Program-made: the position numbers and the translations under genes
NCBI GenBank assembly: GCA_000320545.1
Contig: ADNK01003222.1
Coordinates: forward strand, 1-34,759
Source of the DNA: Bigelowiella natans CCMP2755
Taxonomy: Eukaryota > Protista > Cercozoa
Direction of reading: 5' to 3'
DNA: 34,759 nucleotides
The notes under the pieces: model-generated
Database searches by the model: none
Seen by the model: only the letters and a program-made list of their open reading frames with translations
What the model was told of the DNA's origin: nothing
Shown here: positions 12,522-30,560 of the stretch, one piece after another
Position numbering within the stretch: position 1 is the first letter of the stretch
Layout of the letters: each line of letters starts with the position of its first letter

Positions 12522-13217
12522 CAGCAGCAGCAGAATGGATGGGTAGAGCAACTAAGAATAGAGTATCACTTGTATTTCATCCGAGGACAAGAGGATGATG
12601 TGTATTGATAATAAGAAGGGTCACGGTAATATTGTGATGATAAATAACAAATAACAAGACAAGTAGCATTACAACGGCAACAGGCAGGGATAGATATGCG
12701 TACGTGTTTAGTATACGACGTATGGGAAATTCGAGTACTGATCTGGCTTGCTGCTATAGATGATATAATCATCATCGTAGCTCATCGCAGTTGTCACTGA
12801 TAATGATGATGATGCATGATGATGATGGAAGGAACTGTGTTATCTTCGATACAATAAATACTTGCCCACACACATCTAGACAAGGTATAAAAAGCATCTC
12901 CCTTCTAGCGTTCATGCTCATCTCAGAATAATGTGTGCTATATATGTATTGTAAAATATACGTACAGTCTACTCGCTATATATTTAGCACTGCCAGTCTG
13001 GCGTGCATCTGCTATCTTGATTAAATCTTTTAAATGGTCGCAGTACACGTACGCGTACGTGTGCCAGACTATAGCAGTCTGCAGTGCATGATCGACAATA
13101 TAACATGCGTCGTGTACGCGCACGACAGCAGGCTAGCAGGTGCGTGTACGTATGTGTACGTGTTGTCATCATGTGCGGCCCACACTCATGTGCATGTGAG
13201 ACGGATGTGATGAAGAA

Positions 13218-16200
13218 TCAAATTTTTTCAATGGTCATCCTGATGTAGCTGTGCAATGCAGCGGCTACAGCGCTAATGTTGCATCTGTTGGTTTCTGCCA
13301 CAATGTGTTTCATGCATTTGAAAGCGTCCTCATGCGACCGATGTTGCCGCGCACTGCGCGCAGCAGTTCTGGATTCAATTTCAGCCTTTGTCAACCGGTT
13401 CGTGTCGTCGTTGCGATTCATGATCGCGCGCATTTGATTGCGCAATCTGATTTGTTCTCGACCATGTGTTGGACATTGCAGGAGATGATCCATGTCCTTC
13501 AGGATGCCACATGCATCGCACGTGGCATCTTCCTCTGTGCATTGTCCACGTGACAGCATGAATTTGCCAAGATTGCCGACACCACAGATGGCGCGCATCC
13601 ATGATGTAGCAACACTTGGAAGTTTCAGTTTGATGCCGGTGATCGAAGATGACGGGAGGAAACCAAGATTCTTGAGATGCACAGCGCGCAATGAATCATT
13701 GGACCATTCCTCTTCGAATTCGTTGAAAGCACAAGATTTCATCACCTTGTGATGTTTTTTCAGTTCTTTTTTCAGCGCCTCTGTTGTCGCCAAAACGGTG
13801 GGCAATTCGTCACCTAACAAGTCGTCAGTGATCGATTTGAGCCGTCGAAACAAGGATGCTTTGTTCCACGTGTGTGTGGGCACATCAATCCACGATGTGC
13901 CATCCAACATTTTTCGATTTTCAATGATGAAGCCATAACTGCTCCAATCATTTATTCCCTCATGGATTTGAGGACCGCTGCCTGTGTCGATCCATGCGTT
14001 AGTGCGTAACCATGATTTAGCACACTGCACTTTAGTTTGATATCGGGGTGGCAACGTGCCAGTGAGGACGTGGGGGACGTCGTTGGAGATGGATCCAGGT
14101 AATCCCAATATACGTTTCAGGGTTTGGGATTCCATGGAATCCATCTGTTTTATTCGTATGTTTCTTCGTGATCTCCATATTGGAGCAGCGTATCTGCTGG
14201 ATGCAAGGAACCATGATTTGTAAAATTTCAGTCTGACGTTTAGCGGTACAAGGTGTCTGGAATAACACAACCTTAACAAAAACCTTCGCTTCTTTTGCAA
14301 TCTCAGGTGAGAAGCAAGAGCATGTTTTTCAAAGGTTAATTTGTTGTCGAAGATTAGTCCGAGACATCTGCCGCTGTCGACTCTTTTTATTTTTCCTTGG
14401 AGATTGAGAGAGATGTTCCAGGAGGTTTGGTGTCGGTGGGCTTTATTTCTTTTGTCAATTATAAGGTACCCGCTCTTGTCCCCATTGAATCGCATCCGCC
14501 ATTTCATGCACCAGTCCGTCATTTGGTTTAGGTCGGCCTGGATATCATCTTGCATTTTCCCCCATCGGTTTGGCGAAAACAATTTGTAGGGGGTAACGTC
14601 GTCACAGTATATTTGGAAATCTGTGTTGGTAATATGTTCGTAAATGTCGTAATAGGTTATGAAAAGGAAACAGCTGAGAGATGATCCTTCGGGGACGCCG
14701 CTCCCAAGGTTCATGTGCTCAGAGAGAGTATTGCCAAATCTGAATCTGGCGGTACGATCTCTGAGCCAGTCGTCGATCCACAGCAATAGCGAGCCTCGTA
14801 TTCCGTATTTGTCATGTAACTTGCGTATCATGCCGGAATGCCAGGCTTTTGGATAAGCTTTAGAGGCATCTGTAAACAACAGGATGGCTGCAAGCTTTTT
14901 GTTATATACTCCATCCTCGATTGACTGCGTCATCTTTGTGAGTGCAGTTTCGCAGGATCGATTTTTCATGAATGCATACTGATGTATGCTAATGTTTTTG
15001 GGGGGTATAGCTTCGCGGAGCCGTTGTTCTATTAGTTTGTCTTCTATTTTTGAAGCTATTTGTAGGAGAGAAATCGTTCTCCCGTTGAGAGGGGTGTTAA
15101 GTTCTTTGTTGGCCTTAGGGATGAGACAAAAAATGGCCGCCTTACGTGAGCCATCTCGGGTACCCCATCTATATGACATGTTGAATGTAGCTAACCACAG
15201 TTGATGGAGTTTCTTGCTTTTTTTCAACATGTTTAGGTGAACACCATCATCGCCAGGAGACTTGTACGGTGATGCTTTGTTGATCACGTTTCTTAGTTCA
15301 TGCATAGAAAAATCTCTGTTGTATGAATTAACACTGTGGATCTTTTTGTCTTCATTTTTCCTGAAGGTATTTCTCCAAGCCTCAGTTTCAGCGTGAAAGG
15401 TTCGATTTTTCTTGTCTGACGGGTGTGGTTTGTAGATATGTTTCCATTTGGCAACACACACTCCACATTTTTTTTCTTCAGAGGTTTCGCCATCGAGTCC
15501 TCCGAATTTATCCCGCCCTCTGGATTTTTGGAATAATTTGTACAGCATTCTGGTATGATTCCCATTGTTGTATTTTTCGAAGCGAGACAAGAATAATTGC
15601 CATGCTTCGTACTGAAGGGTTTCGGTGGTTCGTTCAAGTTCGGCGTTGATTTCTTGGATCTTGGTTTCTAATAATTTTCTCTTCCGAAATTTCCTTTCGT
15701 GTTTCAAGGATCTAAATAATTTTTCTTGTTGATCTTTGATGGATTTATATTTTTTGTCGTTTTGGTATGGCTTGATTGGACTCCAACGTTGTCGTTTTTT
15801 TGGTGTGCAGCTATTAAAAGCTTTTCCGGTAAAGTCCCAGAACCAGCGTTCAAGCTTTTTTGCATCAGCCTCCGATTGAACGTTTAGTATGCGCTGGTGC
15901 AAGCGTTCGGTAATATTATTCAATTTTTCGTCAAATCGTTTTACATCGAATTTGTCGATGTCATATATCATTGGTGAAGTCTGTTGATGGATTGCCACAG
16001 GTTTTCCAAAGTGGATACCGAAATGGTCACTTGTCGTGGTGTTGGCCATCTGATATTCTATTTGGTGTGCGAAGTTTGAGGAGCACAGCACATGATCAAG
16101 TGTGCTTGTGTTTCCTTTTCTGAAATATGTGGCTTCCCCAGGGTTGACCATCATGATGTTGTTATCCGACAACCACTGGTGTAGGTATCTGCCACGTCTA

Positions 16201-16712
16201 TCTTCTTGGTTTCGGACATCGTAGGTGGAGTGTTTAGCATTAGTGTCCCCCACGATGATGTATTTTTTCCATTTCTGTTTCCGAATGATGTTCATTATGA
16301 AATCTAATCTCTCTTTCAGATGTGAGATGTTTTGGTGTGGCTGGAGGTACACCATTATGACAGCATATTTTTCAATGCTGTGTATGAAAAAACTAATATC
16401 GTAATTGTTATCATCTATAGGTATATGAATTATATCTGTGTTCTTTTTTCTTAATCCAAAGCTCCCAGAGGAGCCGCTCGTCCGAATCACTTCGTATCCC
16501 GCTGGAGGATGCAGCCTCTCCGATTCTTTGAGGCGGCCTTCCCCAAACCAGGCGAGTTCGATGTTGTTGGTGGTTATCATTTCTTTTAACATATTATATC
16601 TTCTATTTATTCTTTGCCTGCCTTGTTCAGTTCCGTTTTTACTGCGTATGTTTTGGTAGTAGTAGGGGAGATTCAAATGATTAACCATATTTACGTGTCC
16701 TTCTGTTTTCAT
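13218..16712 (-). CDS. LINE ORF2: apurinic-type endonuclease + reverse transcriptase + C-terminal zinc finger (1164 aa)
   Basis: APE motifs QNIRS, VYL, IVGDTNAKH, TY..STLDHV, TSDH. RT motifs SPGDDGV, RTISLL, HQYAFMKNRSCET, DASKAY, GVPEGSSLS, YCDDV, CLGLIFDNKLTF. C-terminal CDACG..DMDHLLQCP. No RNase H motif recognised. Confidence 0.95.
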   Translation of the reverse strand: MKTEGHVNMVNHLNLPYYYQNIRSKNGTEQGRQRINRRYNMLKEMITTNNIELAWFGEGRLKESERLHPPAGYEVIRTSGSSGSFGLRKKNTDIIHIPIDDNNYDISFFIHSIEKYAVIMVYLQPHQNISHLKERLDFIMNIIRKQKWKKYIIVGDTNAKHSTYDVRNQEDRRGRYLHQWLSDNNIMMVNPGEATYFRKGNTSTLDHVLCSSNFAHQIEYQMANTTTSDHFGIHFGKPVAIHQQTSPMIYDIDKFDVKRFDEKLNNITERLHQRILNVQSEADAKKLERWFWDFTGKAFNSCTPKKRQRWSPIKPYQNDKKYKSIKDQQEKLFRSLKHERKFRKRKLLETKIQEINAELERTTETLQYEAWQLFLSRFEKYNNGNHTRMLYKLFQKSRGRDKFGGLDGETSEEKKCGVCVAKWKHIYKPHPSDKKNRTFHAETEAWRNTFRKNEDKKIHSVNSYNRDFSMHELRNVINKASPYKSPGDDGVHLNMLKKSKKLHQLWLATFNMSYRWGTRDGSRKAAIFCLIPKANKELNTPLNGRTISLLQIASKIEDKLIEQRLREAIPPKNISIHQYAFMKNRSCETALTKMTQSIEDGVYNKKLAAILLFTDASKAYPKAWHSGMIRKLHDKYGIRGSLLLWIDDWLRDRTARFRFGNTLSEHMNLGSGVPEGSSLSCFLFITYYDIYEHITNTDFQIYCDDVTPYKLFSPNRWGKMQDDIQADLNQMTDWCMKWRMRFNGDKSGYLIIDKRNKAHRHQTSWNISLNLQGKIKRVDSGRCLGLIFDNKLTFEKHALASHLRLQKKRRFLLRLCYSRHLVPLNVRLKFYKSWFLASSRYAAPIWRSRRNIRIKQMDSMESQTLKRILGLPGSISNDVPHVLTGTLPPRYQTKVQCAKSWLRTNAWIDTGSGPQIHEGINDWSSYGFIIENRKMLDGTSWIDVPTHTWNKASLFRRLKSITDDLLGDELPTVLATTEALKKELKKHHKVMKSCAFNEFEEEWSNDSLRAVHLKNLGFLPSSSITGIKLKLPSVATSWMRAICGVGNLGKFMLSRGQCTEEDATCDACGILKDMDHLLQCPTHGREQIRLRNQMRAIMNRNDDTNRLTKAEIESRTAARSARQHRSHEDAFKCMKHIVAETNRCNISAVAAALHSYIRMTIEKI

Positions 16713-18111
16713 ATGCCCTGAATCGTAGGTAGCTGCCCTGATATGTGATTTGTGAATTCAGCAGTTTGGTGGCCTCTTCATGCGAGTGCACAAACAGCTG
16801 AAGTAGAGGGCCCTTGCCGAGAGGTTCTATTGCTGCGACTTTTACATCGATGTTGGTTTCGATTATCTGCTTGATGATTCCAATTCGTGTTGATTTTTCC
16901 TGCTCGTTAGGTCCCAGCCTTGGGCCTCTCAGAACTACAGAGTGCTTACTTGGCCTTGACTTAGCTGCTCTGACTGTGGTCACTAATCCAAAGAGTGAGG
17001 GAAGGAATGATCCTTGTCCTAACTGATGTTCGGTGTTAAGCAGATCCAGGTAAGCATCCATCTTAGATTCTCTGGAGCCTTTGAAGAACACTTTTAGGTG
17101 GGTTTTATTCCTAGATTTGAATTGGATTCCTTGAAAGTCCTTCCCATATTTCGCTTGGAAAGCTACGTGCATTTGGAATTCGTTCAATCCTAGTGCATCG
17201 ATCAACTTTGGAGTTATTTTGGACAGGTTTTTCCCAATATCTGGAACATCTTTTTTTTCACTGGATGGGTTCAAATCCTCTACGTTCTTTCCGGCTAGGC
17301 ATTTAGTCTCTTCTTCCTCGGTGTTAACTTCTGTCAGTGTGTCGCGGTTTTCATCCCTCGGATCTGCTGTGTTTGTTTCCTCACTTGTTGGTTCGTTGGG
17401 ATGTTTTTTTTTGCCAGTGAGAACAGTGCGACATGGGTCGCCGGAGGCCATAATGGCGCCCCCCGCTTGCAGCATGGCTTTTTTGTCAAGTTCCAATATG
17501 AGCACGTTCTGTTTATACTTCCGGTTGTATTTCCTTTGATTCCTGGCGTGACTTTTTGGAACTTGCCAACTCTGGCTATTCTTTCGCTCAGCTAGTCTTT
17601 GTACTTCTGCTTCAGGATATTTATCTCGACCATGAGGTTCATCAGCGCGTGATGAGGTTGTGACACTAGCGTAAGTTCTCGAGGTCCGTTGCATCGAGGA
17701 GGGTTGAGCTTCCATTGTGCCATTCTTCTGATGTTCCTTGATATAAGTCAGTTCTTCTTCAAGTTTCAGTAATTTGTTTTTAAGCCCAGCGTTTTCCTCC
17801 TGCATGTCTTTTTGATCTTGCTGCAATTGTTGTTGTTTCTCATCAACTAACTGGACCATTGTGGTCAGCATTTCACACAATTTTTTCATTGTGTTCCACT
17901 GAGGAGTTTCTTTGCGTTCCATTGTTGCAGACAGTGTTGAAGTAACTTCGCGAAGGCATTGAGACAGATCATGACTTTTCCTATCAGAGCCACAGTCGTC
18001 ATCATTGCATTCTGAATCGAGATCCAACGTTGCGTGTTGGTTCTTTTTGTGCTTTCTTCCCTTTTTGGGTGTCTGGTGCTTGTTGTTGCCACGCGCGCTG
18101 CGCGTGATCAT
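16681..18111 (-). CDS. LINE ORF1 protein (coiled coil + RRM-like C-terminus)
   Basis: Open frame directly upstream of ORF2, overlapping it by 32 nt. First ATG at 18111 (MITRS; the track's 18123 start is TTG). Heptad-like LQQDQKDMQEENAGLKNKLLKLEEELTYIK; C-terminal SVVLRG...LLQLFVHSHEEATKLL...FRAY resembles the RRM of LINE ORF1s. Confidence 0.8.
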   Translation of the reverse strand: MITRSARGNNKHQTPKKGRKHKKNQHATLDLDSECNDDDCGSDRKSHDLSQCLREVTSTLSATMERKETPQWNTMKKLCEMLTTMVQLVDEKQQQLQQDQKDMQEENAGLKNKLLKLEEELTYIKEHQKNGTMEAQPSSMQRTSRTYASVTTSSRADEPHGRDKYPEAEVQRLAERKNSQSWQVPKSHARNQRKYNRKYKQNVLILELDKKAMLQAGGAIMASGDPCRTVLTGKKKHPNEPTSEETNTADPRDENRDTLTEVNTEEEETKCLAGKNVEDLNPSSEKKDVPDIGKNLSKITPKLIDALGLNEFQMHVAFQAKYGKDFQGIQFKSRNKTHLKVFFKGSRESKMDAYLDLLNTEHQLGQGSFLPSLFGLVTTVRAAKSRPSKHSVVLRGPRLGPNEQEKSTRIGIIKQIIETNIDVKVAAIEPLGKGPLLQLFVHSHEEATKLLNSQITYQGSYLRFRAYENRRTRKYG

Positions 18112-19162
18112 CACGGTGGGCAATATTTCACTTGTGCGCGGCTATGAGTCCGTTTGAAGATGTGCACATGCGCTATTGAGTTGTCATTGGGCATATTTCG
18201 ATCATCGAGCGCACGAACTGTGCAAAATGAACACACTTTGCAGTAGTCATACGCAAGATGTTGTCAGCGTTCGTCATATCGCTATAGCAGTCATACACGC
18301 GCAATGTACGCTAATTGATGCACATGTAGCAGACACACATGCATATATACATGCAGCGTACACGACAGCTAGTAGCGCTCGGCTATGGCACTCCTATGCA
18401 TGCATGCTGCATGATGTACGCACTGTGTGCACAATCGTAGCCAGCTAGCCAGGGCCATGCGTGCGCCATCTAGCTATGCAGTCCATCATCTATTTGTAAC
18501 TTCTTCGCGATGATAACGGTAATTGACAATTTCACGAGTGCTAGTTACACATTCCATGTTTGAGATGCATCACTGGTACGCATTCGTCTTAGCCAACAAA
18601 ACCGGAAAAAAGAAAGGTGCTAGTCCTCACTCCCAATTGAAAGAAAGGCAAAATTAAGGATATGGCAGCAGGACACCATGTTGTCACCATAGTAAAGATG
18701 TTAAAAATAGAAGGAATATATATACTCCTTCCTTGGTTGTTTCTTGGATTGGTTTATTTCTTCCTCGATACTTGTTCTACCTCCACTTCACATGAATCAT
18801 AGCATGAAGAGTAAACCATTACCTCTCCATACCATGAGCATGCAATAGGAATTCGTGATTTCGAACAAATGAAAAGGACACTGTTTTGAGAGACTATATA
18901 GTAGAGGCAAACTCATATGGGAATATAAATCAGTATACATGCAGAATGGATCTAAAATGTCATATTTTATGTAGAAATCAAACTTCATCAGCTTTGTGCT
19001 GCTTTCGATATTCTGGTGTAATAGCCACCATTTAAAATCGCAACTACTTTCTGTTTACCCAGCAGTTGTCACCGATGGACAAATATACCAATATTAAGAA
19101 GAAAAACAGCATAGCACCTAAAAGAATCTTTCTATATGAATACGCCTATCCCACCCACCCAC

Positions 19163-19334: not shown

Positions 19335-22300
19335 TTAATAGTAAGTGTATGTGTAGACCCATCCTGATTCTCCTTGCTGTCGCATAATTGACTTACGGAT
19401 CTCGTCATAACAAAGAATGTAAATCGCAAATGGAAGAGCAGGAAGCCAGTGAACGAACTCAATAGCCCGTGTACCAAGCCCTGTATTCAAACCTGGAGTG
19501 TAGCAAAGGAAGATACCTAGTACTGTTTCAAAGACAAGACCAAAGTTGAGGACTTGATTCCTCATTCCCTGGTGGTAGATAGAAAGTGTACGAGTCTTGC
19601 AAGCTAGGATATCTGCCCATTGTACGACGATAATACACACGAAATATGCACACTGTGCGTGAGCCAATGCTTCTTTTGGATTCTGGCAAATCCCATTACA
19701 AATGTTGCACTTTTTCAGATCGTAGCTGTTGCCGTCATAAATCATGGTAGCTGCGTCACAGTTGCCTCCCGTGCGAACAATGACAGGCTTGTCGCTATCA
19801 TCGTTGGCATCAGCTTCGAATGCAGCAGAAAGACCAAACAGGATCTCAGGCTTGAAACCATAGTCGTTAAGAACGACGAAGTATGTGTAGAATCCACCAA
19901 GGGCCTGGATAATACCGATTTGAAGGTATGAGAAAGAAATCAGCTTTGCAGTAACCAAACGGTCCGTGTCCATATTTCGCGGCGGCTTTTCCATAATATT
20001 AGCTTCTCTGTTCTCGTAGGCAAGGGAAATAGCAGGAACCATATCCGTACCGAGGTCAATACACAAGATAAGTACAGTCGTAAGGGGAAGAGGAATCGAA
20101 GTAAGAATAAACATTAGGAAGGGCGTGATCTCAGGGATGTTGGATGATAGTGTGTATGCAATAGATTTCTTCAAGTTGTCAAAGATGAGTCGGCCTTCTT
20201 GCACACCATCTACAATAGATGCGAAGTTATCGTTGAGAAGAATCATATCGGCAGCCTCCTTTGCAACATCGGAACCTTCCATTCCCATTGCAACACCGAT
20301 GTTAGCCTTCTTCAGCGCAGGAGAATCGTTAACACCATCTCCAGTTACGGCAACGACGTAATTGCACGACTTGTCAGGTTTGAGTCCACGCCCACGCTTA
20401 ATGGTCTTATTCTGGAGACCCTTCACGATGAAGAGCTTTTGCTGTGGAGAAGTACGTGCAAAAACGATATCATCATAGTCCAACACACGGTCCAACTTAT
20501 CAGGAGTGAACGTCTGTAGCTGCTTGCCCTCGATAACAATAGCGGTAATTCGAGGATCATCCTCCTTGACGGTATCTGGGTCTTTGCCTTGAAGAGTAAG
20601 TTCTGCTCGTAGATCACGGATTGTCTTAGAGTTCTTCCTGATGATATTAACTTGCTTTGCAATAGCTTCTGCAGTGACGGCATGATCACCGGTAACCATG
20701 ATGACATTGATTCCTGCACGTTGACACTTGAGAACAGACCCTGGGACAGCAGGACGAGGAGGGTCAATCAGAGAAATAAGACCACAGAATGTAAGAGATG
20801 ACTGGATCTCCTCCCTAAAATTCCAGTCCTCCTCTGCTCCGGAGACGTGGTACTTGAAATCAGCAGGATACTTCGACTTGTCGAGATAGGTGTAAGCAAG
20901 GCCAAGAACACGTTCACCACCGTCCATCAACCGGAAAATGTTGTCGTTGAAGCTCTTGATGTGAGCCTTCTTTTCCTCAATCTTCCCATCTATCAAAATT
21001 TTGTCGCATCTAGTCCAAACACGCTCAGGTGCTCCTTTGAACATGAGCATGTGAGGTTTGGTCTTATCACAATCTTGCTCATTGATGGAAACCATGAACT
21101 TATTCGCAGACTTAAATGGTACGAGACCGTTAGGAACACGAGGGTTTTGATCACGTAGTTTCTTAATTGGCTGAAGAGTCTGGAAGTATTTAATGAAGGC
21201 TGTTTCTCCTGCATCTCCTTCAACAGGCCATGTATTGACCTCAGCGTCTTCAGGCATTTCCTTGAACACTGCAGTTGCACAGTTGACACCAATGTTGTGA
21301 AGCACTTGAAAGGTTGGATCCTTCATATCGATCTCATTAGGAGCATGAATCTTGTTGTTGTAGTAAAGGTGAGCAACACTCATACGGTTTTGAGTCAGAG
21401 TTCCTGTTTTATCTGATGCAATAACGGAAGTTGAACCTAGAGTCTCTACAGCCTCGAGGTTTTTCACCAAAACCTTCTGTGTTTCCATACGCTTTGCAGT
21501 AAGAGTGAGCGCAACCGTCACAGTTGCAAGAAGTCCTTCAGGGACGTTAGCCACAATAATACCAATGCAGAACACAACGTTATCAATTGCATCGAATCCT
21601 TTAATGATACCGATAATGAGGAAAACTACACCAAGCACAATAGCAACGGAGGAAATGATCTTGATGAAATGTTCAATCTCCTGTGCAATGGGGGTTTCTT
21701 CCTCTTCTGCAGTAGAAGCAAGCTTTGCAATTCGACCAATGACAGTTCTGTCACCCGTCGCAATGACAATTCCCTTTCCATTTCCTTCGCAGCAAAGAGT
21801 ACCATAGAAAGCAACGTTTGTGGCTTCAAGAGGTCTCTTGCCTTTGGGATCTGCCTTTGGGAAACGTTCCTGCGGTTCTGGCTCTCCAGTCATAGAGGCA
21901 TTATCGACTTTGAAGGATTGTGCCTCAAACATCCGGACGTCAGCTGGAATCTTCTTACCGTTCTTGATCTCAACGATATCTGTAATAAAAATAAACATAA
22001 TTAATTGGACGATACTGCATACAATATGTTGTATCCATGGAAATAGGGGAAGAAAACTTCATTTTAGTTTACCGCCAATGACGATATCAGTTGCTGGAAA
22101 ATCGGAGATTTTCTTTCCTTCACGGGTAACAATGGTCGATGTTGGTGTCAACTTCTTAAAACCTGACAAAGAACATTTTCGTATTATGGGAGGCAATAAA
22201 TACATCAATAATAAATCTTGCCAAAATTAAAGGAGTAACACATGAAATTGTTGCAGACTGTTATAAATTGTATACCTTGCATGACCGCATCAGCTTGTGC

Positions 22301-28896: not shown

Positions 28897-29037
28897 CATG
28901 CACATGACACACGTACGATGTGTTGCATCGTTGTGGTTTTCTCAGGTCCCGGCCTTGTGGGTGCTGGTATGATATTTGTCGCTGCTTTGGTCGCTAGTGG
29001 GATTTTCGAAAAACCATCGACAGCTCAGTCGTCTTGA
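24942..29037 (+). CDS. EamA / drug-metabolite transporter (DMT) family protein, probably plastid-targeted; multi-exon, start codon uncertain
   Basis: In-frame exons: 25306-25558 (...GRLMLVGVA), 25736-25785 (GLYGALTVVLR), 26399-26454 (AGVIEMALYNLGAQ), 26627-26686 (GIYHTDATRAAFFTQ), 26946-27036 (ASVILTPVISRLSGERV), then GDILCLAGAVSWSLYI, FSAIGPGALADWAQSVGQKTVSSSE, 28673-28748 (ANIILCSEPLFSALLAFVMLQE), 28946-29037 (GAGMIFVAALVAS..TGA). Two EamA repeats. Confidence 0.88.
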
Positions 29038-29228
29038 ACGATCACAAAACAGAATGGTCACAAGAGCATACACATTACTCTGCCCTACCTCGGCACGCGC
29101 GCAAATCAGAGATCCAATTGCATTCACAGATGATCGTTTTAAAGTTTGTGTTGATGAGTGGGAGATCGAAGACTTGTGCATGTACAACCATGCCAGATGT
29201 GTTCTGTTCAGTCCACGTCGTGCCGCTA

Positions 29229-30215
29229 TGCTGCTGCGATTCGATCTGACCTCGCTCGGCTTGTTTTTGGACTGGCACTCACTAGCTCACTCAGCAGCAC
29301 GTCCCGGCGTGCCGGTGTCGTTCGTGCAGAAGCAGCGCTAGCTGATGCGAAACGTAGCCAGGTGACGACGACAATTCTAGAATGCTCGCTAGCTCGCTCC
29401 ACCGCTGCTAGCTAGCTAGGCCGTCTAGCCGCCGTGCGCTGCACCACACCGCACTCAGCCTGCATTGCTGGGCAGCGCGCGTGGCACTCACTCGAAATGC
29501 TAGAATGACATCTAGACATGCCAGCATGTGTGGGTGCAACTGGGCATCGCCTCGCACGTGGCGTGGTGCAAACGCGCACAATTGCTGGCGGTTCTCGTGT
29601 TGTGCACCACGCTAGCACGCTAGCACGTGCCAAGCGTGTGCATGCTGGCATGCTGCCGCCTGTGCTGTGGTGTGCGTGAGATCGCGTTCACTTTTGTGAT
29701 TTTTTCACCAACAAGTCTGTGTTGAGCAGCACAGTGCGGAGCTCTCAGAGAACCTGAGTCTCCCACATCCACTGACTGGAGCACCCTTGCTTGGCAGGTT
29801 TTTGATTGAGCGCAGTGTGGTCTCAAAAGTCTGAAAACGTCGAAAAAAGCCATGACACGTGCAAAGCTTTGTGCTTGAACGAACGAAACACTGGATCATT
29901 GAAGCATTGACGACAATTTGACACTCAGCACGTGTCTGCACAGACAACACGCTGCGCTGCCAACGTGAAGATGCGCCCCACTGGCCCAACCAACACACGT
30001 GCAGAGCAGGAAAGGAGTCCACAACGAACAAACGGACGAACGAACGAAGCGGTTCCACAGGAGCAGCTGAATGGATCATGTGTCACGCTGACTCATCCAT
30101 GATCCCCTCAACCGACTGGATCTCCAGGGAAAGTTGAGGGTTTGTTCACATCGCCCACGGCACTTGGACGGATGACGTCGCAGGGCGCGAGGTGAGCGAT
30201 CAATGGTTGCCAAGG

Positions 30216-30283
<68 letters not shown>

Positions 30284-30308
30284 GCACAAGCATCGGAGAC
30301 TCTGCTGG
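29229..30308. mobile_element. Degenerate non-coding repeat/transposon-like block, TpA-depleted, with an (ACGA)n tract, hairpins and (TTG)23
   Basis: Intergenic and compositionally alien: 13 TpA in ~1080 bp, none in 29623-30308. acgaacaaacggacgaacgaacgaa at ~30024-30048; stems at 30073-30140. Mobile-element identity is inferred; no coding homology recognised. Confidence 0.45.
30216..30284. repeat. (TTG)23 microsatellite
   Basis: Directly visible, at the right end of the TpA-free block. Confidence 0.95.
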
Positions 30309-30560
30309 TATGAATGTCCATCAGTTGGTCAATAATATGTGCCAATTACATCGTAAAAGCATCAAACACATCATCAAGTCGCAGCATTTGTCATCGATTG
30401 TGTCGTAGTAGTTCTGAAAATAATAATTTTCGTAGTATTGATGATCAAAGAAAGTTTGTCTATCTTGCATCATCATCATCATCATCATCATCATTTTCCA
30501 TCCGAAGGAAGAAGAAGAAGAAGGAATCAGGAAGAAATCAACAAATCAACATACACATTC

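What the first reader, a model, noticed from the sequence alone, without database searches (positions are those of the whole stretch)
13276..13935. 3' end of LINE ORF2 is stripped of TpA while the middle of the same ORF is normal
Seen: 2 TpA in 660 bp (13607, 13815) versus 18 in 300 bp at 15001-15300 of the same ORF, with TpA returning beyond ~13936. The encoded ~220 aa stretch has no Tyr and many His/Cys/Met. One reading frame with two regimes is hard to explain by codon usage. Inference: the terminal ~0.7 kb was hypermutated at TpA, with the effect fading inward. Higher copy number of 3' fragments (5'-truncated LINE copies) or spreading from the UTR could set the gradient.
Basis: partly seen in the sequence, partly recalled or inferred. 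Interest (0 to 1): 0.8.

Follow-up and report, generated by a model that had tools for sequence, protein, structure and literature searches.

The report
TpA-erased 3' end of algal LINE
The last 0.7 kb of an intact jumping gene (LINE) in the alga Bigelowiella natans has lost almost every TA letter pair to the host's TA-to-TG/CA hypermutation, which wears this element down from its 3' end inward; the footprint is real, but the process was reported in a 2026 preprint.

Summary
Window 13276-13935 holds 2 TpA, against 44 expected from base composition and about 35 from the rest of the same ORF (Poisson P about 3e-13). CpA+TpG is enriched there (o/e 1.64).

The tract is the 3' end of ORF2 of an intact, recently active non-LTR retrotransposon of about 5 kb. 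The element is on the minus strand and carries a (TA)n tail. The genome is Bigelowiella natans, not human.

Thirty genomic copies show what happened:
- Older copies have lost essentially every TpA over the 2.6 kb compared.
- Different copies carry TG or CA at the same site, so TA was ancestral and each copy was hit independently, on both strands.
- The TA-poor 3' tract is inherited from the source lineage. It contains at least 21 "ghost" TA sites, including the stop codon (TAA to TGA).
- Loss in the source lineage falls with distance from the 3' end: 79%, 45%, 43%, 11%, even at sites where a silent outcome exists.

The process itself, TpA to TpG/CpA hypermutation of foreign DNA in B. natans, was published as a 2026 preprint. 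This scan has already met it on other DNA of this genome, including LINE copies. New here are the 3'-to-5' polarity within a still-intact element and five unexplained surviving TpA.

The parts
13197..18160 (-). Full-length non-LTR retrotransposon (LINE), about 4.96 kb, with intact ORF1 and ORF2. About 10 near-identical full-length siblings exist in the genome.
   Evidence: The 3' limit comes from where 29 copies stop aligning, at 13193-13197. The 5' limit comes from 10 copies whose match ends at query position 2356-2364 of window:15801-18300.
16681..18123 (-). ORF1 (480 aa, no Pfam match)
13218..16712 (-). ORF2 (1164 aa): apurinic-type endonuclease, reverse transcriptase and a Cys/His-rich C-terminus
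   Evidence: Pfam Exo_endo_phos_2 at 9.5e-18 and RVT_1 at 7.3e-18; translation.
13276..13935 (-). The TpA-erased tract of the finding: 2 TpA, CpA+TpG o/e 1.64. It holds at least 19 'ghost' TA sites lost in the source lineage.
13936..14230 (-). Boundary zone, holding the first normal-density TpA. 22 of the 24 TA-to-TG/CA differences among the 99.6-99.9% identical copies fall here.
13218..13220 (-). Stop codon TGA, derived from ancestral TAA. TAA is kept in L013 and 7 older copies; L012 has CAA.
13244..13269 (-). Predicted hairpin TGTAGC-N14-GCTACA holding two of the five surviving TpA (13267 and 13247). The sequence is kept in the sister family L077. It may be the 3' recognition element for the reverse transcriptase.
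   Evidence: (folds; z-scores not significant, so a hint only).
13181..13196 (-). Probable remnant of the element's (TA)n tail, scrambled into a TG/CA mix (CATGCACATGAGTGTG after the terminal CATCCGTCTCA).
   Evidence: The tail is still (TA)n in L008, L022 and L077, and is partly or fully scrambled in L010, L019 and L030. For this copy the reading is an inference.

Best explanation
The tract is the inherited footprint of the TpA-to-TpG/CpA hypermutation of Bigelowiella natans. This is a DNA-level, locus-restricted process that changes A:T to G:C only at the palindromic step TpA, on either strand.

Shown:
- Integrated LINE copies are hit after insertion. Heavily hit copies lose 88-100% of their TpA while other sites diverge by only 0.3-3%.
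- The conversion is confined to the element.

Shown for the gradient, inferred for its cause:
- In lightly hit copies and in the source (master) lineage, hits are concentrated toward the 3' end.
- Source elements that took hits in the tolerant C-terminal part of ORF2 stayed functional and passed them on.
- Over the family's history the last ~0.7 kb was therefore cleared of TpA. Tyr became His or Cys, Ile became Met or Thr, and the TAA stop became TGA. The endonuclease and reverse-transcriptase parts kept their TpA.
- That produces two dinucleotide regimes in one open reading frame.

Inferred:
- The enzyme is unknown. The preprint proposes an ADAT2-like adenine deaminase.
- The 3' polarity may come from nucleation at the very abundant 3' fragments or at the (TA)n tail, followed by spreading.
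For: Identity of the genome and element:
- The genome is B. natans. JGI Bigna1 gene models are 93-99% identical to the query part they cover, and earlier scan notes agree.

Direction and specificity of the change:
- Young copies (99.6-99.9% identical) share the TA-poor tract and normal TA upstream. Older copies have 0-4 TA per 660 bp over the whole 2.6 kb.
- At 97 reference TA sites, older copies carry TG or CA almost exclusively. L015 has 53 such changes against 9 others; L016 has 59 against 7.
- Outcomes at the same site agree between copies only about 50-65% of the time, so TA was ancestral and the hits were independent.
- 55 TA sites are shared with a sister family at 68% aa identity, which confirms the polarity.

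Neutral, both-strand, DNA-level:
- Outcomes are only weakly tied to synonymy.
- TG and CA are interspersed, with no strand-coordinated runs.
- L024 and L025 are segmental duplicates. They have 0 substitutions in 1.5 kb of one flank. Across the LINE and the other flank they differ at about 19 TA-versus-TG/CA sites and 6 TG-versus-CA sites, which shows post-insertion change at the DNA level.
- Flanks of erased copies are otherwise TA-normal.
- CpG loss is only 1-19%.

The tract itself and the gradient:
- There are 53 ghost TA sites, 21 of them in 13209-13909. Even near-identical copies differ TG versus CA at 13906 and 13468.
- Master-lineage loss of synonymous-capable TA sites runs 15/19, 9/20, 12/28, 3/28 going 5' (Fisher P = 4e-4 for the zone against upstream).
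- Young-copy hits: 22/224 opportunities in 13936-14230 against 0/840 further upstream.

Independent experiment:
- bioRxiv 10.64898/2026.01.13.699255 reports a mutation-accumulation experiment in B. natans. It found about 1000-fold hypermutation, exclusively A-to-G/T-to-C at TpA, in integrated virus regions. TpA-depleted CDS were enriched for the endonuclease-RT and RT Pfam families.
Against: - No copy preserves the fully TA-normal ancestral 3' tract, so its complete history is inferred from 21 polymorphic sites and a sister family that is itself TA-poor there.
- Five TpA inside the tract are kept in 9-13 of the 14 older copies, although octamer-identical sites upstream are converted. A simple 'strongest at the 3' end' gradient does not predict this.
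- In older copies, ancestral TA in the 3' zone appear to be retained more often (about 50%, small numbers) than upstream (under 3%).
- The C-terminal region is also the least conserved protein segment (58% against 68-75% identity with the sister family). Relaxed selection therefore contributes to the gradient, and its share is not separated cleanly.
- Only one full-length, partly converted dead copy (L015) shows the polarity directly.
Confidence: 0.85

Rival explanations
1. The gradient is purely a selection filter. Hypermutation hits source elements evenly along their length, and only hits in the weakly constrained C-terminal 220 codons are compatible with further transposition, so only those accumulate.
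For: The C-terminal segment is the least conserved against the sister family (58.5% aa identity against 68-75%). Synonymous outcomes are favoured among master-lineage losses (13 against 6 in the tract, 20 against 12 upstream).
Against: - Sites with a synonymous outcome available still show 79% loss in the tract against 32% upstream, declining to 11% further 5'.
- The dead, full-length copy L015 is converted densely from 13937 to about 14900, partly to 15323 and not beyond.
- Truncated, partly converted copies keep their 5'-most TA.
- Hits in young copies include many non-synonymous changes, yet all lie within about 1 kb of the 3' end.
Confidence: 0.15
2. The hits are made during retrotransposition, on the RNA (ADAR-like) or on first-strand cDNA (APOBEC-like, but on adenine). 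The 3' end is exposed first and longest, which sets the gradient.
For: The 3'-to-5' polarity resembles the editing gradients on retroviral cDNA. Target-primed reverse transcription starts at the 3' end. The conversion is confined to element sequence.
Against: - RNA editing would give only sense TG and cDNA editing only sense CA. Observed outcomes are about 58% TG and 42% CA, interspersed at random within single copies.
- The duplicated locus L024/L025 acquired different outcomes at the same sites after duplication.
- The preprint observed the same signature arising in integrated, single-copy DNA during vegetative growth.
Confidence: 0.07
3. Chimeric origin: the source element acquired its 3' 0.7 kb by recombination or template switching from an already erased dead copy.
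For: The TA count steps sharply at 13936, from 2 per 660 bp to 30 per 660 bp. Variants among young copies combine in a reticulate way.
Against: - The TA-poor tract is shared by all subfamilies down to 86% identity, with the same five surviving TA.
- Losses inside it are stepwise and still polymorphic among near-identical copies.
- Loss declines gradually upstream rather than stopping at a junction.
- The sister family shows the same trend independently.
Confidence: 0.05
4. Functional avoidance of TpA/UpA in the 3' part, with no special mutation process behind it. Possible reasons are escape from UA-cleaving RNases, avoidance of cryptic polyadenylation or splice signals, or a second reading frame kept open.
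For: The absence of TA removes TAA and TAG in all six frames. The 3' end of such elements is recognised as RNA by their reverse transcriptase, and a conserved hairpin is predicted.
Against: - Dead, truncated and frameshifted copies lose TA far more completely than the functional one.
- The replacements are strictly TG or CA.
- A single-copy, non-coding island in the same window has the same signature.
- The process has been observed experimentally.
Confidence: 0.03

Closest known systems
TpA hypermutation of integrated NCLDV and virophage DNA in Bigelowiella natans (Mettrop et al., bioRxiv 10.64898/2026.01.13.699255, 2026)
   Same: - Same species.
- Same signature: only A-to-G/T-to-C, only at TpA, giving TpG or CpA.
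- Sharply local, and episodic: some lines or copies are hit and others are not.
- Long-term footprint of TpA depletion with CpA+TpG enrichment. The preprint already lists endonuclease-RT and RT Pfam families among TpA-depleted CDS.
   Different: - The preprint measured new mutations in two virus-derived regions and did not analyse retrotransposon copies. 'Retrotranspos', 'gradient' and flanking context do not occur in its text.
- Here the evidence comes from paralogous copies.
- It shows a 3'-to-5' polarity, a still-intact element with an erased end, strand-random outcomes and relative sparing of CTA/TAG contexts.
Repeat-induced point mutation (RIP) of fungi
   Same: A dinucleotide-specific transition hypermutation of selfish DNA on both strands. 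It is confined to the element, is not clock-like, and destroys coding capacity.
   Different: The chemistry and direction are opposite: RIP turns CpA/TpG into TpA, and this process turns TpA into CpA/TpG. It creates no stop codons. Repetition is not required, since the preprint's NCLDV region is single-copy and so is the island at 29.0-30.3 kb of this window.
APOBEC3 editing of retroviruses and LINE/Alu cDNA
   Same: Host-driven hypermutation of retroelements, with a positional gradient and a dinucleotide context.
   Different: APOBEC3 deaminates C on single-stranded cDNA, so the changes are strand-specific (G-to-A on the plus strand) and made at the time of insertion. Here the changes are at A:T pairs, on both strands at random, and occur after integration.
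ADAR hyper-editing of repeat-derived dsRNA
   Same: A-to-G with a 5' U/T preference; directed at repeats.
   Different: ADAR acts on RNA and would be heritable only through retrotransposition, and only as sense-strand A-to-G. ADAR also favours UAG, whereas TAG/CTA contexts are the relatively spared ones here.

Membership tests
B. natans TpA-to-TpG/CpA hypermutation (Mettrop et al. 2026) | Changes are almost exclusively A-to-G / T-to-C transitions | tested here: met
   At reference TA sites, copies carry TG or CA, with only rare other states. L015 has 53 such changes against 9 other differences and L016 has 59 against 7.
B. natans TpA-to-TpG/CpA hypermutation (Mettrop et al. 2026) | Restricted to the TpA dinucleotide, giving both TpG and CpA | tested here: met
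   A/T-to-G/C changes outside TpA are not elevated over G/C-to-A/T. Outcomes are about 58% TG and 42% CA, interspersed.
B. natans TpA-to-TpG/CpA hypermutation (Mettrop et al. 2026) | Sharply local: the rate is orders of magnitude above neighbouring DNA | tested here: met
   In L016, 88% of TA sites are converted against 0.37% divergence at other sites. Flanks are TA-normal. L024 and L025 have 0 substitutions in 1.5 kb of flank against about 40 in the 1.5 kb of LINE plus the other flank.
B. natans TpA-to-TpG/CpA hypermutation (Mettrop et al. 2026) | Episodic and heterogeneous between lines or loci | tested here: met
   L011 has 10 ordinary differences and 0 TA hits. L016 has 7 ordinary differences and 59 TA hits.
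B. natans TpA-to-TpG/CpA hypermutation (Mettrop et al. 2026) | Arises de novo in integrated DNA during vegetative growth | not testable with these tools
   Only indirect support: post-duplication differences between L024 and L025. Repeats were probably outside the callable genome of the published experiment; this is my inference.
Non-LTR retrotransposon (LINE) with APE-type endonuclease | ORF2 with an apurinic-type endonuclease followed by a reverse transcriptase | tested here: met
   PF14529 at 9.5e-18 (residues 117-233) and PF00078 at 7.3e-18 (residues 532-751).
Non-LTR retrotransposon (LINE) with APE-type endonuclease | Copies share a fixed 3' end, have variable 5' truncation and a simple-repeat tail | tested here: met
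   All copies end at 13193-13197, with 5' ends scattered between 14080 and 15330 or full length. A (TA)n tail follows CATCCGTCTCA.
Non-LTR retrotransposon (LINE) with APE-type endonuclease | Target-site duplications flanking insertions; assignment to a named clade | not tested
   There was no PDB sequence match at E <= 0.001. The word-based protein search found only 3 proteins, all from this LINE group or chimeric with it. Clade not assigned.
Fungal RIP | C-to-T at CpA (TpG), which raises TpA | tested here: not met
   The direction is the reverse. TG and CA alternate at the same site across copies, which requires a TA ancestor. TA sites shared with the outgroup family are the ones lost.
ADAR-type RNA editing fixed by retrotransposition | Only sense-strand A-to-G (TA-to-TG), acquired before insertion | tested here: not met
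   42% of outcomes are CA. There is no strand coordination, and changes occurred after duplication.

The most novel reading that the evidence does not exclude
A still-active retrotransposon is being driven toward a TpA-free sequence by a TpA-specific host DNA mutator that nucleates at LINE 3' ends and spreads inward. Candidate nucleators are small RNAs or chromatin marks raised by the more than 1000 short 3' fragments, or the (TA)n tail. The erased tract would then be both scar and armour: sequence without TpA can no longer be hit. The element would be evolving resistance from its 3' end, and the family would provide a natural time series of an arms race with what may be a natural double-strand DNA adenine editor.
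Probability: 0.3. Interest if true: 0.7.

Novelty: new member of a known kind. Interest (0 to 1): 0.45.

Why it matters
The underlying process is a natural, locus-targeted A:T-to-G:C mutator acting on chromosomal DNA at TpA. It is of wide interest for genome defence, mutation-rate evolution and possibly natural adenine base editing. It is already in the literature as a 2026 preprint, and this scan has met it repeatedly in this genome.

This locus adds three things:
- It shows, in a functional element, how the mutator shapes a transposon that survives it. One ORF holds two dinucleotide regimes, Tyr codons have become His or Cys, and the TAA stop has been rewritten to TGA.
- It supplies positional rules that a mechanism must explain: 3' polarity, confinement to the element, strand-random hits, relative sparing of CTA/TAG, and five stubborn survivors.
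- LINE copies were probably outside the callable genome of the published experiment, so comparing paralogous copies is a complementary way to read the process.

Tried and rejected
For the same reason the 5' halves of the copies could not be fetched.
- Second TA-free tract (29621-30309) as a repeat family: it is single-copy.
- Other TA-free tracts in fetched loci: no relation to this LINE and no Pfam match. One is a repeat containing a heat-shock-element-like array, and its two copies show no TG/CA switching. Not every TA-free tract need be a mutator footprint.
- TA depletion leaking into the flanks of erased copies: not seen in general. It is seen only in the L024/L025 pair, on the 3' side.
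- Strand-coordinated runs of TG or CA, as expected for single-strand intermediates: none.
- Tetranucleotide or octamer context as the reason the five TpA survive: CTA/TAG contexts are about 12 times more often spared upstream. However, identical octamers upstream are converted, so context alone fails.
- Isolation of those five sites: the ghost-site map shows they had neighbours.
- CpG-methylation decay as a companion signature: CpG loss is only about twice that of other C/G transitions.
- Enzyme leads: no Tet_JBP match (the controls did not ring, so this is uninformative). There is one A_deamin locus, probably the universal ADAT1. Neither discriminates.
- Sequence search of solved structures with ORF2: no match.
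- Comparing the 5' ends of the two sister families: too diverged (46% identity) to polarise changes.
- The costly representative-protein search, structure prediction and the RNA-model tools were not used, because the question did not need them.
Full report
**Observation**

Window 13276-13935 contains 2 TpA, at 13607 and 13815. Base composition predicts 44 (o/e 0.045). TG and CA are enriched (o/e 1.48 and 1.85) and CpG is normal. The rest of the same ORF has 148 TpA in 2777 bp, which gives Poisson P(<=2) of about 3.5e-13. Only one other place in the 34.7-kb window is equally poor in TpA. TpA resumes abruptly at 13936. The comparison figure of 18 TpA in 15001-15300 is correct. The encoded residues, about 927-1146, contain no Tyr.

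**What the sequence is**

The tract is the 3' end of a 1164-aa ORF on the minus strand (13218-16712). This ORF has an apurinic-type endonuclease domain and a reverse-transcriptase domain. It is preceded by an overlapping 480-aa ORF1.

Genomic copies stop aligning at 13193-13197, only about 22 nt after the stop codon. Ten copies end together near 18157-18164. The element is therefore a LINE of about 4.96 kb.

It terminates in CATCCGTCTCA followed by a (TA)n tail. The tail is intact in some copies and scrambled into TG/CA mixtures in others, probably including this one.

The genome is Bigelowiella natans. JGI Bigna1 gene models are 93-99% identical to the query part they cover, and earlier notes of this scan say the same. 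The contig is not human. CpG o/e is 0.76, and the neighbouring ORF at 19335-21998 is a P-type ATPase exon with TpA o/e of about 0.6.

**What the copies show**

I compared 29 other copies over the 3' 2.6 kb.

- Fourteen copies at 99.2-99.9% identity share the TA-poor tract and the normal TA density upstream.
- Copies at 86-97.6% identity have 0-4 TpA per 660 bp over most or all of the compared length.
- At the 97 TA sites of the window copy, these older copies carry TG or CA almost without exception. Ordinary differences are few: L015 has 53 TA changes against 9 others, and L016 has 59 against 7.
- Different copies carry different outcomes at the same site, and pairwise agreement is only about 50-65%. 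A site that is TG in one copy and CA in another needs a TA ancestor. The direction is therefore TA to TG/CA, made independently in each copy. This is the reverse of fungal RIP.
- 55 of the window copy's TA sites are also TA in a sister family at 68% aa identity (L077, a marine metagenome contig). This confirms the polarity with an outgroup.

**Nature of the process**

- The choice of TG or CA is only weakly related to synonymy, and many erased copies have broken frames. The hits are therefore essentially neutral.
- TG and CA are interspersed at random within each copy (runs test). This argues against single-stranded or RNA intermediates, which would give strand-coordinated or one-sided outcomes.
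- L024 and L025 are a duplicated locus containing the same truncated insertion. The 1.5 kb on one side has no substitution. The LINE and about 490 bp on its 3' side differ at about 19 TA-versus-TG/CA sites and 6 TG-versus-CA sites. Hits therefore continued on chromosomal DNA after the duplication.
- Flanks of erased copies are otherwise TA-normal.
- CpG loss in the same copies is 1-19%.
- Intensity is not clock-like. L011 has 10 ordinary differences and no hit; L016 has 7 and 59 hits.

**Literature**

All of these properties match a preprint, Mettrop et al., bioRxiv 10.64898/2026.01.13.699255.

- In mutation-accumulation lines of B. natans, two integrated virus regions mutate about 1000 times faster than the rest of the genome.
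- The changes are exclusively A-to-G/T-to-C at TpA, and occur only in some lines.
- An ADAT2-like adenine deaminase is proposed as the enzyme.
- The text does not analyse retrotransposon copies, positional gradients or flanking context.

**The tract of the finding**

The tract is inherited, not a private event of this copy. All copies share it, and they share the same five residual TpA at 13816, 13608, 13275, 13267 and 13247.

Its origin by the same process is visible in 'ghost' sites, where the window copy has TG or CA and other copies have the opposite outcome or still have TA. There are 53 in the 2.6 kb, and 21 of them lie in 13209-13909.

Even copies 99.6-99.9% identical differ TG versus CA at 13906/13905 and at 13468/13467. 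The stop codon is TAA in L013 and seven older copies, TGA in most young copies and CAA in L012. Against the sister family, two of its C-terminal Tyr align with His and Cys here.

**The gradient**

Counting extant plus ghost sites, the source lineage lost 15 of 19 synonymous-capable TA sites in the tract. Going 5', the next segments lost 9 of 20, 12 of 28 and 3 of 28. For the tract against everything upstream, P = 4e-4.

Among the near-identical copies, 22 of 24 TA hits lie in 13936-14230 (224 site-by-copy opportunities), and none in 840 opportunities further upstream. Their distribution among copies is reticulate, so at least some are recurrent.

The full-length copy L015 is densely converted from 13937 to about 14900, partly to 15323 and not beyond. 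Truncated, partly converted copies (L016, L019, L020, L030) keep their 5'-most TA.

The polarity is therefore largely mutational. Selection acts on top of it: synonymous outcomes are preferred in the source lineage, and the C-terminus is the least constrained protein segment.

The sister family shows the same, weaker 3' decline in TpA and rise in CpA+TpG.

Copy number differs little between 13936-14230 and the region upstream. A nucleation-and-spreading model therefore fits better than simple proportionality. This is an inference.

**Context and the unexplained survivors**

In thoroughly converted copies, retained TpA upstream are 8 of 136 in CTA/TAG contexts against 2 of 386 elsewhere.

In the single-copy TA-depleted island at 29000-30309 of this window, 12 of 19 surviving TpA are CTAG, against 2.8% of all TpA in the window.

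The five survivors in the LINE tract are all of the CTA/TAG class. They are kept in 9-13 of the 14 older copies, yet octamer-identical sites upstream are converted. The ghost-site map shows that they were not isolated.

Two of them pair with each other in a predicted hairpin that is conserved in the sister family (folding z-scores are not significant). An edge effect may cover the three terminal ones. The other two remain unexplained.

**Verdict**

The mechanism class is already described for this species, and this scan has found it repeatedly on other DNA of the same genome. Those earlier reports include erased LINE copies, a report of spreading from the 3' end, and CTAG sparing. I tested these points independently here.

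What this locus adds:
- an intact element whose 3' end has been rewritten yet still functions;
- quantified polarity in the source lineage;
- a set of positional rules and exceptions for any mechanistic model.

Noticed in passing
window 29000-30309: A single-copy, apparently non-coding island with TpA o/e 0.27 and CpA+TpG o/e 1.6. It includes 688 bp (29621-30309) with no TpA at all. 12 of its 19 remaining TpA are CTAG, mostly as GCTAGC. It looks like an end-state footprint of the same mutator on non-repeated DNA.
   Followed up: partly
window 17830-18160: The 5'-terminal 330 bp of the same LINE (5' UTR and start of ORF1) are also TpA-poor (5 TpA, o/e 0.23, CpA+TpG 1.54). The element is therefore worn at both ends. 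I could not compare copies because no more genome sequence could be fetched, and the sister family is too diverged there.
   Followed up: partly
window 13181-13196; L008, L010, L017, L019, L022, L023, L030, L077 (3' junctions): The LINE ends in a (TA)n microsatellite tail. In many copies the tail has been scrambled into TG/CA mixtures. Several loci hold two or three 3' ends in tandem, and in L007 and L018 the 3' end abuts the 5' end of another copy. This suggests insertion into existing tails or (TA)n tracts.
   Followed up: partly
G000 genome-wide; L075, L076; L024:2578-2720: Hundreds to more than 1000 short fragments (about 135 bp, 75-85% identical) of the extreme LINE 3' end are scattered in the genome (625 and 1109 first-look candidates). 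They may be heavily truncated copies or a SINE-like family sharing the LINE tail.
   Followed up: no
L012 and L013, position homologous to window 13218-13220: In L012 the ancestral TAA stop of ORF2 became CAA, so the stop is lost. L013 still has TAA, and most young copies have TGA. The mutator can remove a stop codon but never creates one in frame.
   Followed up: partly
P0001, P0003 (JGI Bigna1 models 76607 and 79389): Two annotated B. natans gene models, one with a kinesin domain and one with LTD and LCCL domains, contain 93-99% identical pieces of the LINE ORF2 C-terminus. These are probably annotation chimeras or exonised fragments.
   Followed up: no
L077 (NCBI GCA_001369675.1, CENW01111646.1, 5001 bp): A complete sister LINE (ORF1 483 aa, ORF2 1158 aa, 68% aa identity, intact (TA)n tail) sits on a marine metagenome-assembly contig. 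Close relatives of its 3' end also occur in the B. natans genome (L017, L023). It shows the same 3' TpA decline.
   Followed up: partly
L032:300-620 and L063:2400-2700: A TA-free two-to-three-copy repeat containing a long array of heat-shock-element-like units (nGAAnnTTCn). It shows that some TA-free tracts may be promoters or other functional DNA rather than mutator footprints.
   Followed up: no
window 19335-21998 (minus strand): An 887-aa open frame encoding most of a P-type cation ATPase (E1-E2 ATPase, Cation_ATPase_C). It is a host gene 1.2 kb from the LINE 5' end, with ordinary TpA content (o/e 0.64).
   Followed up: partly
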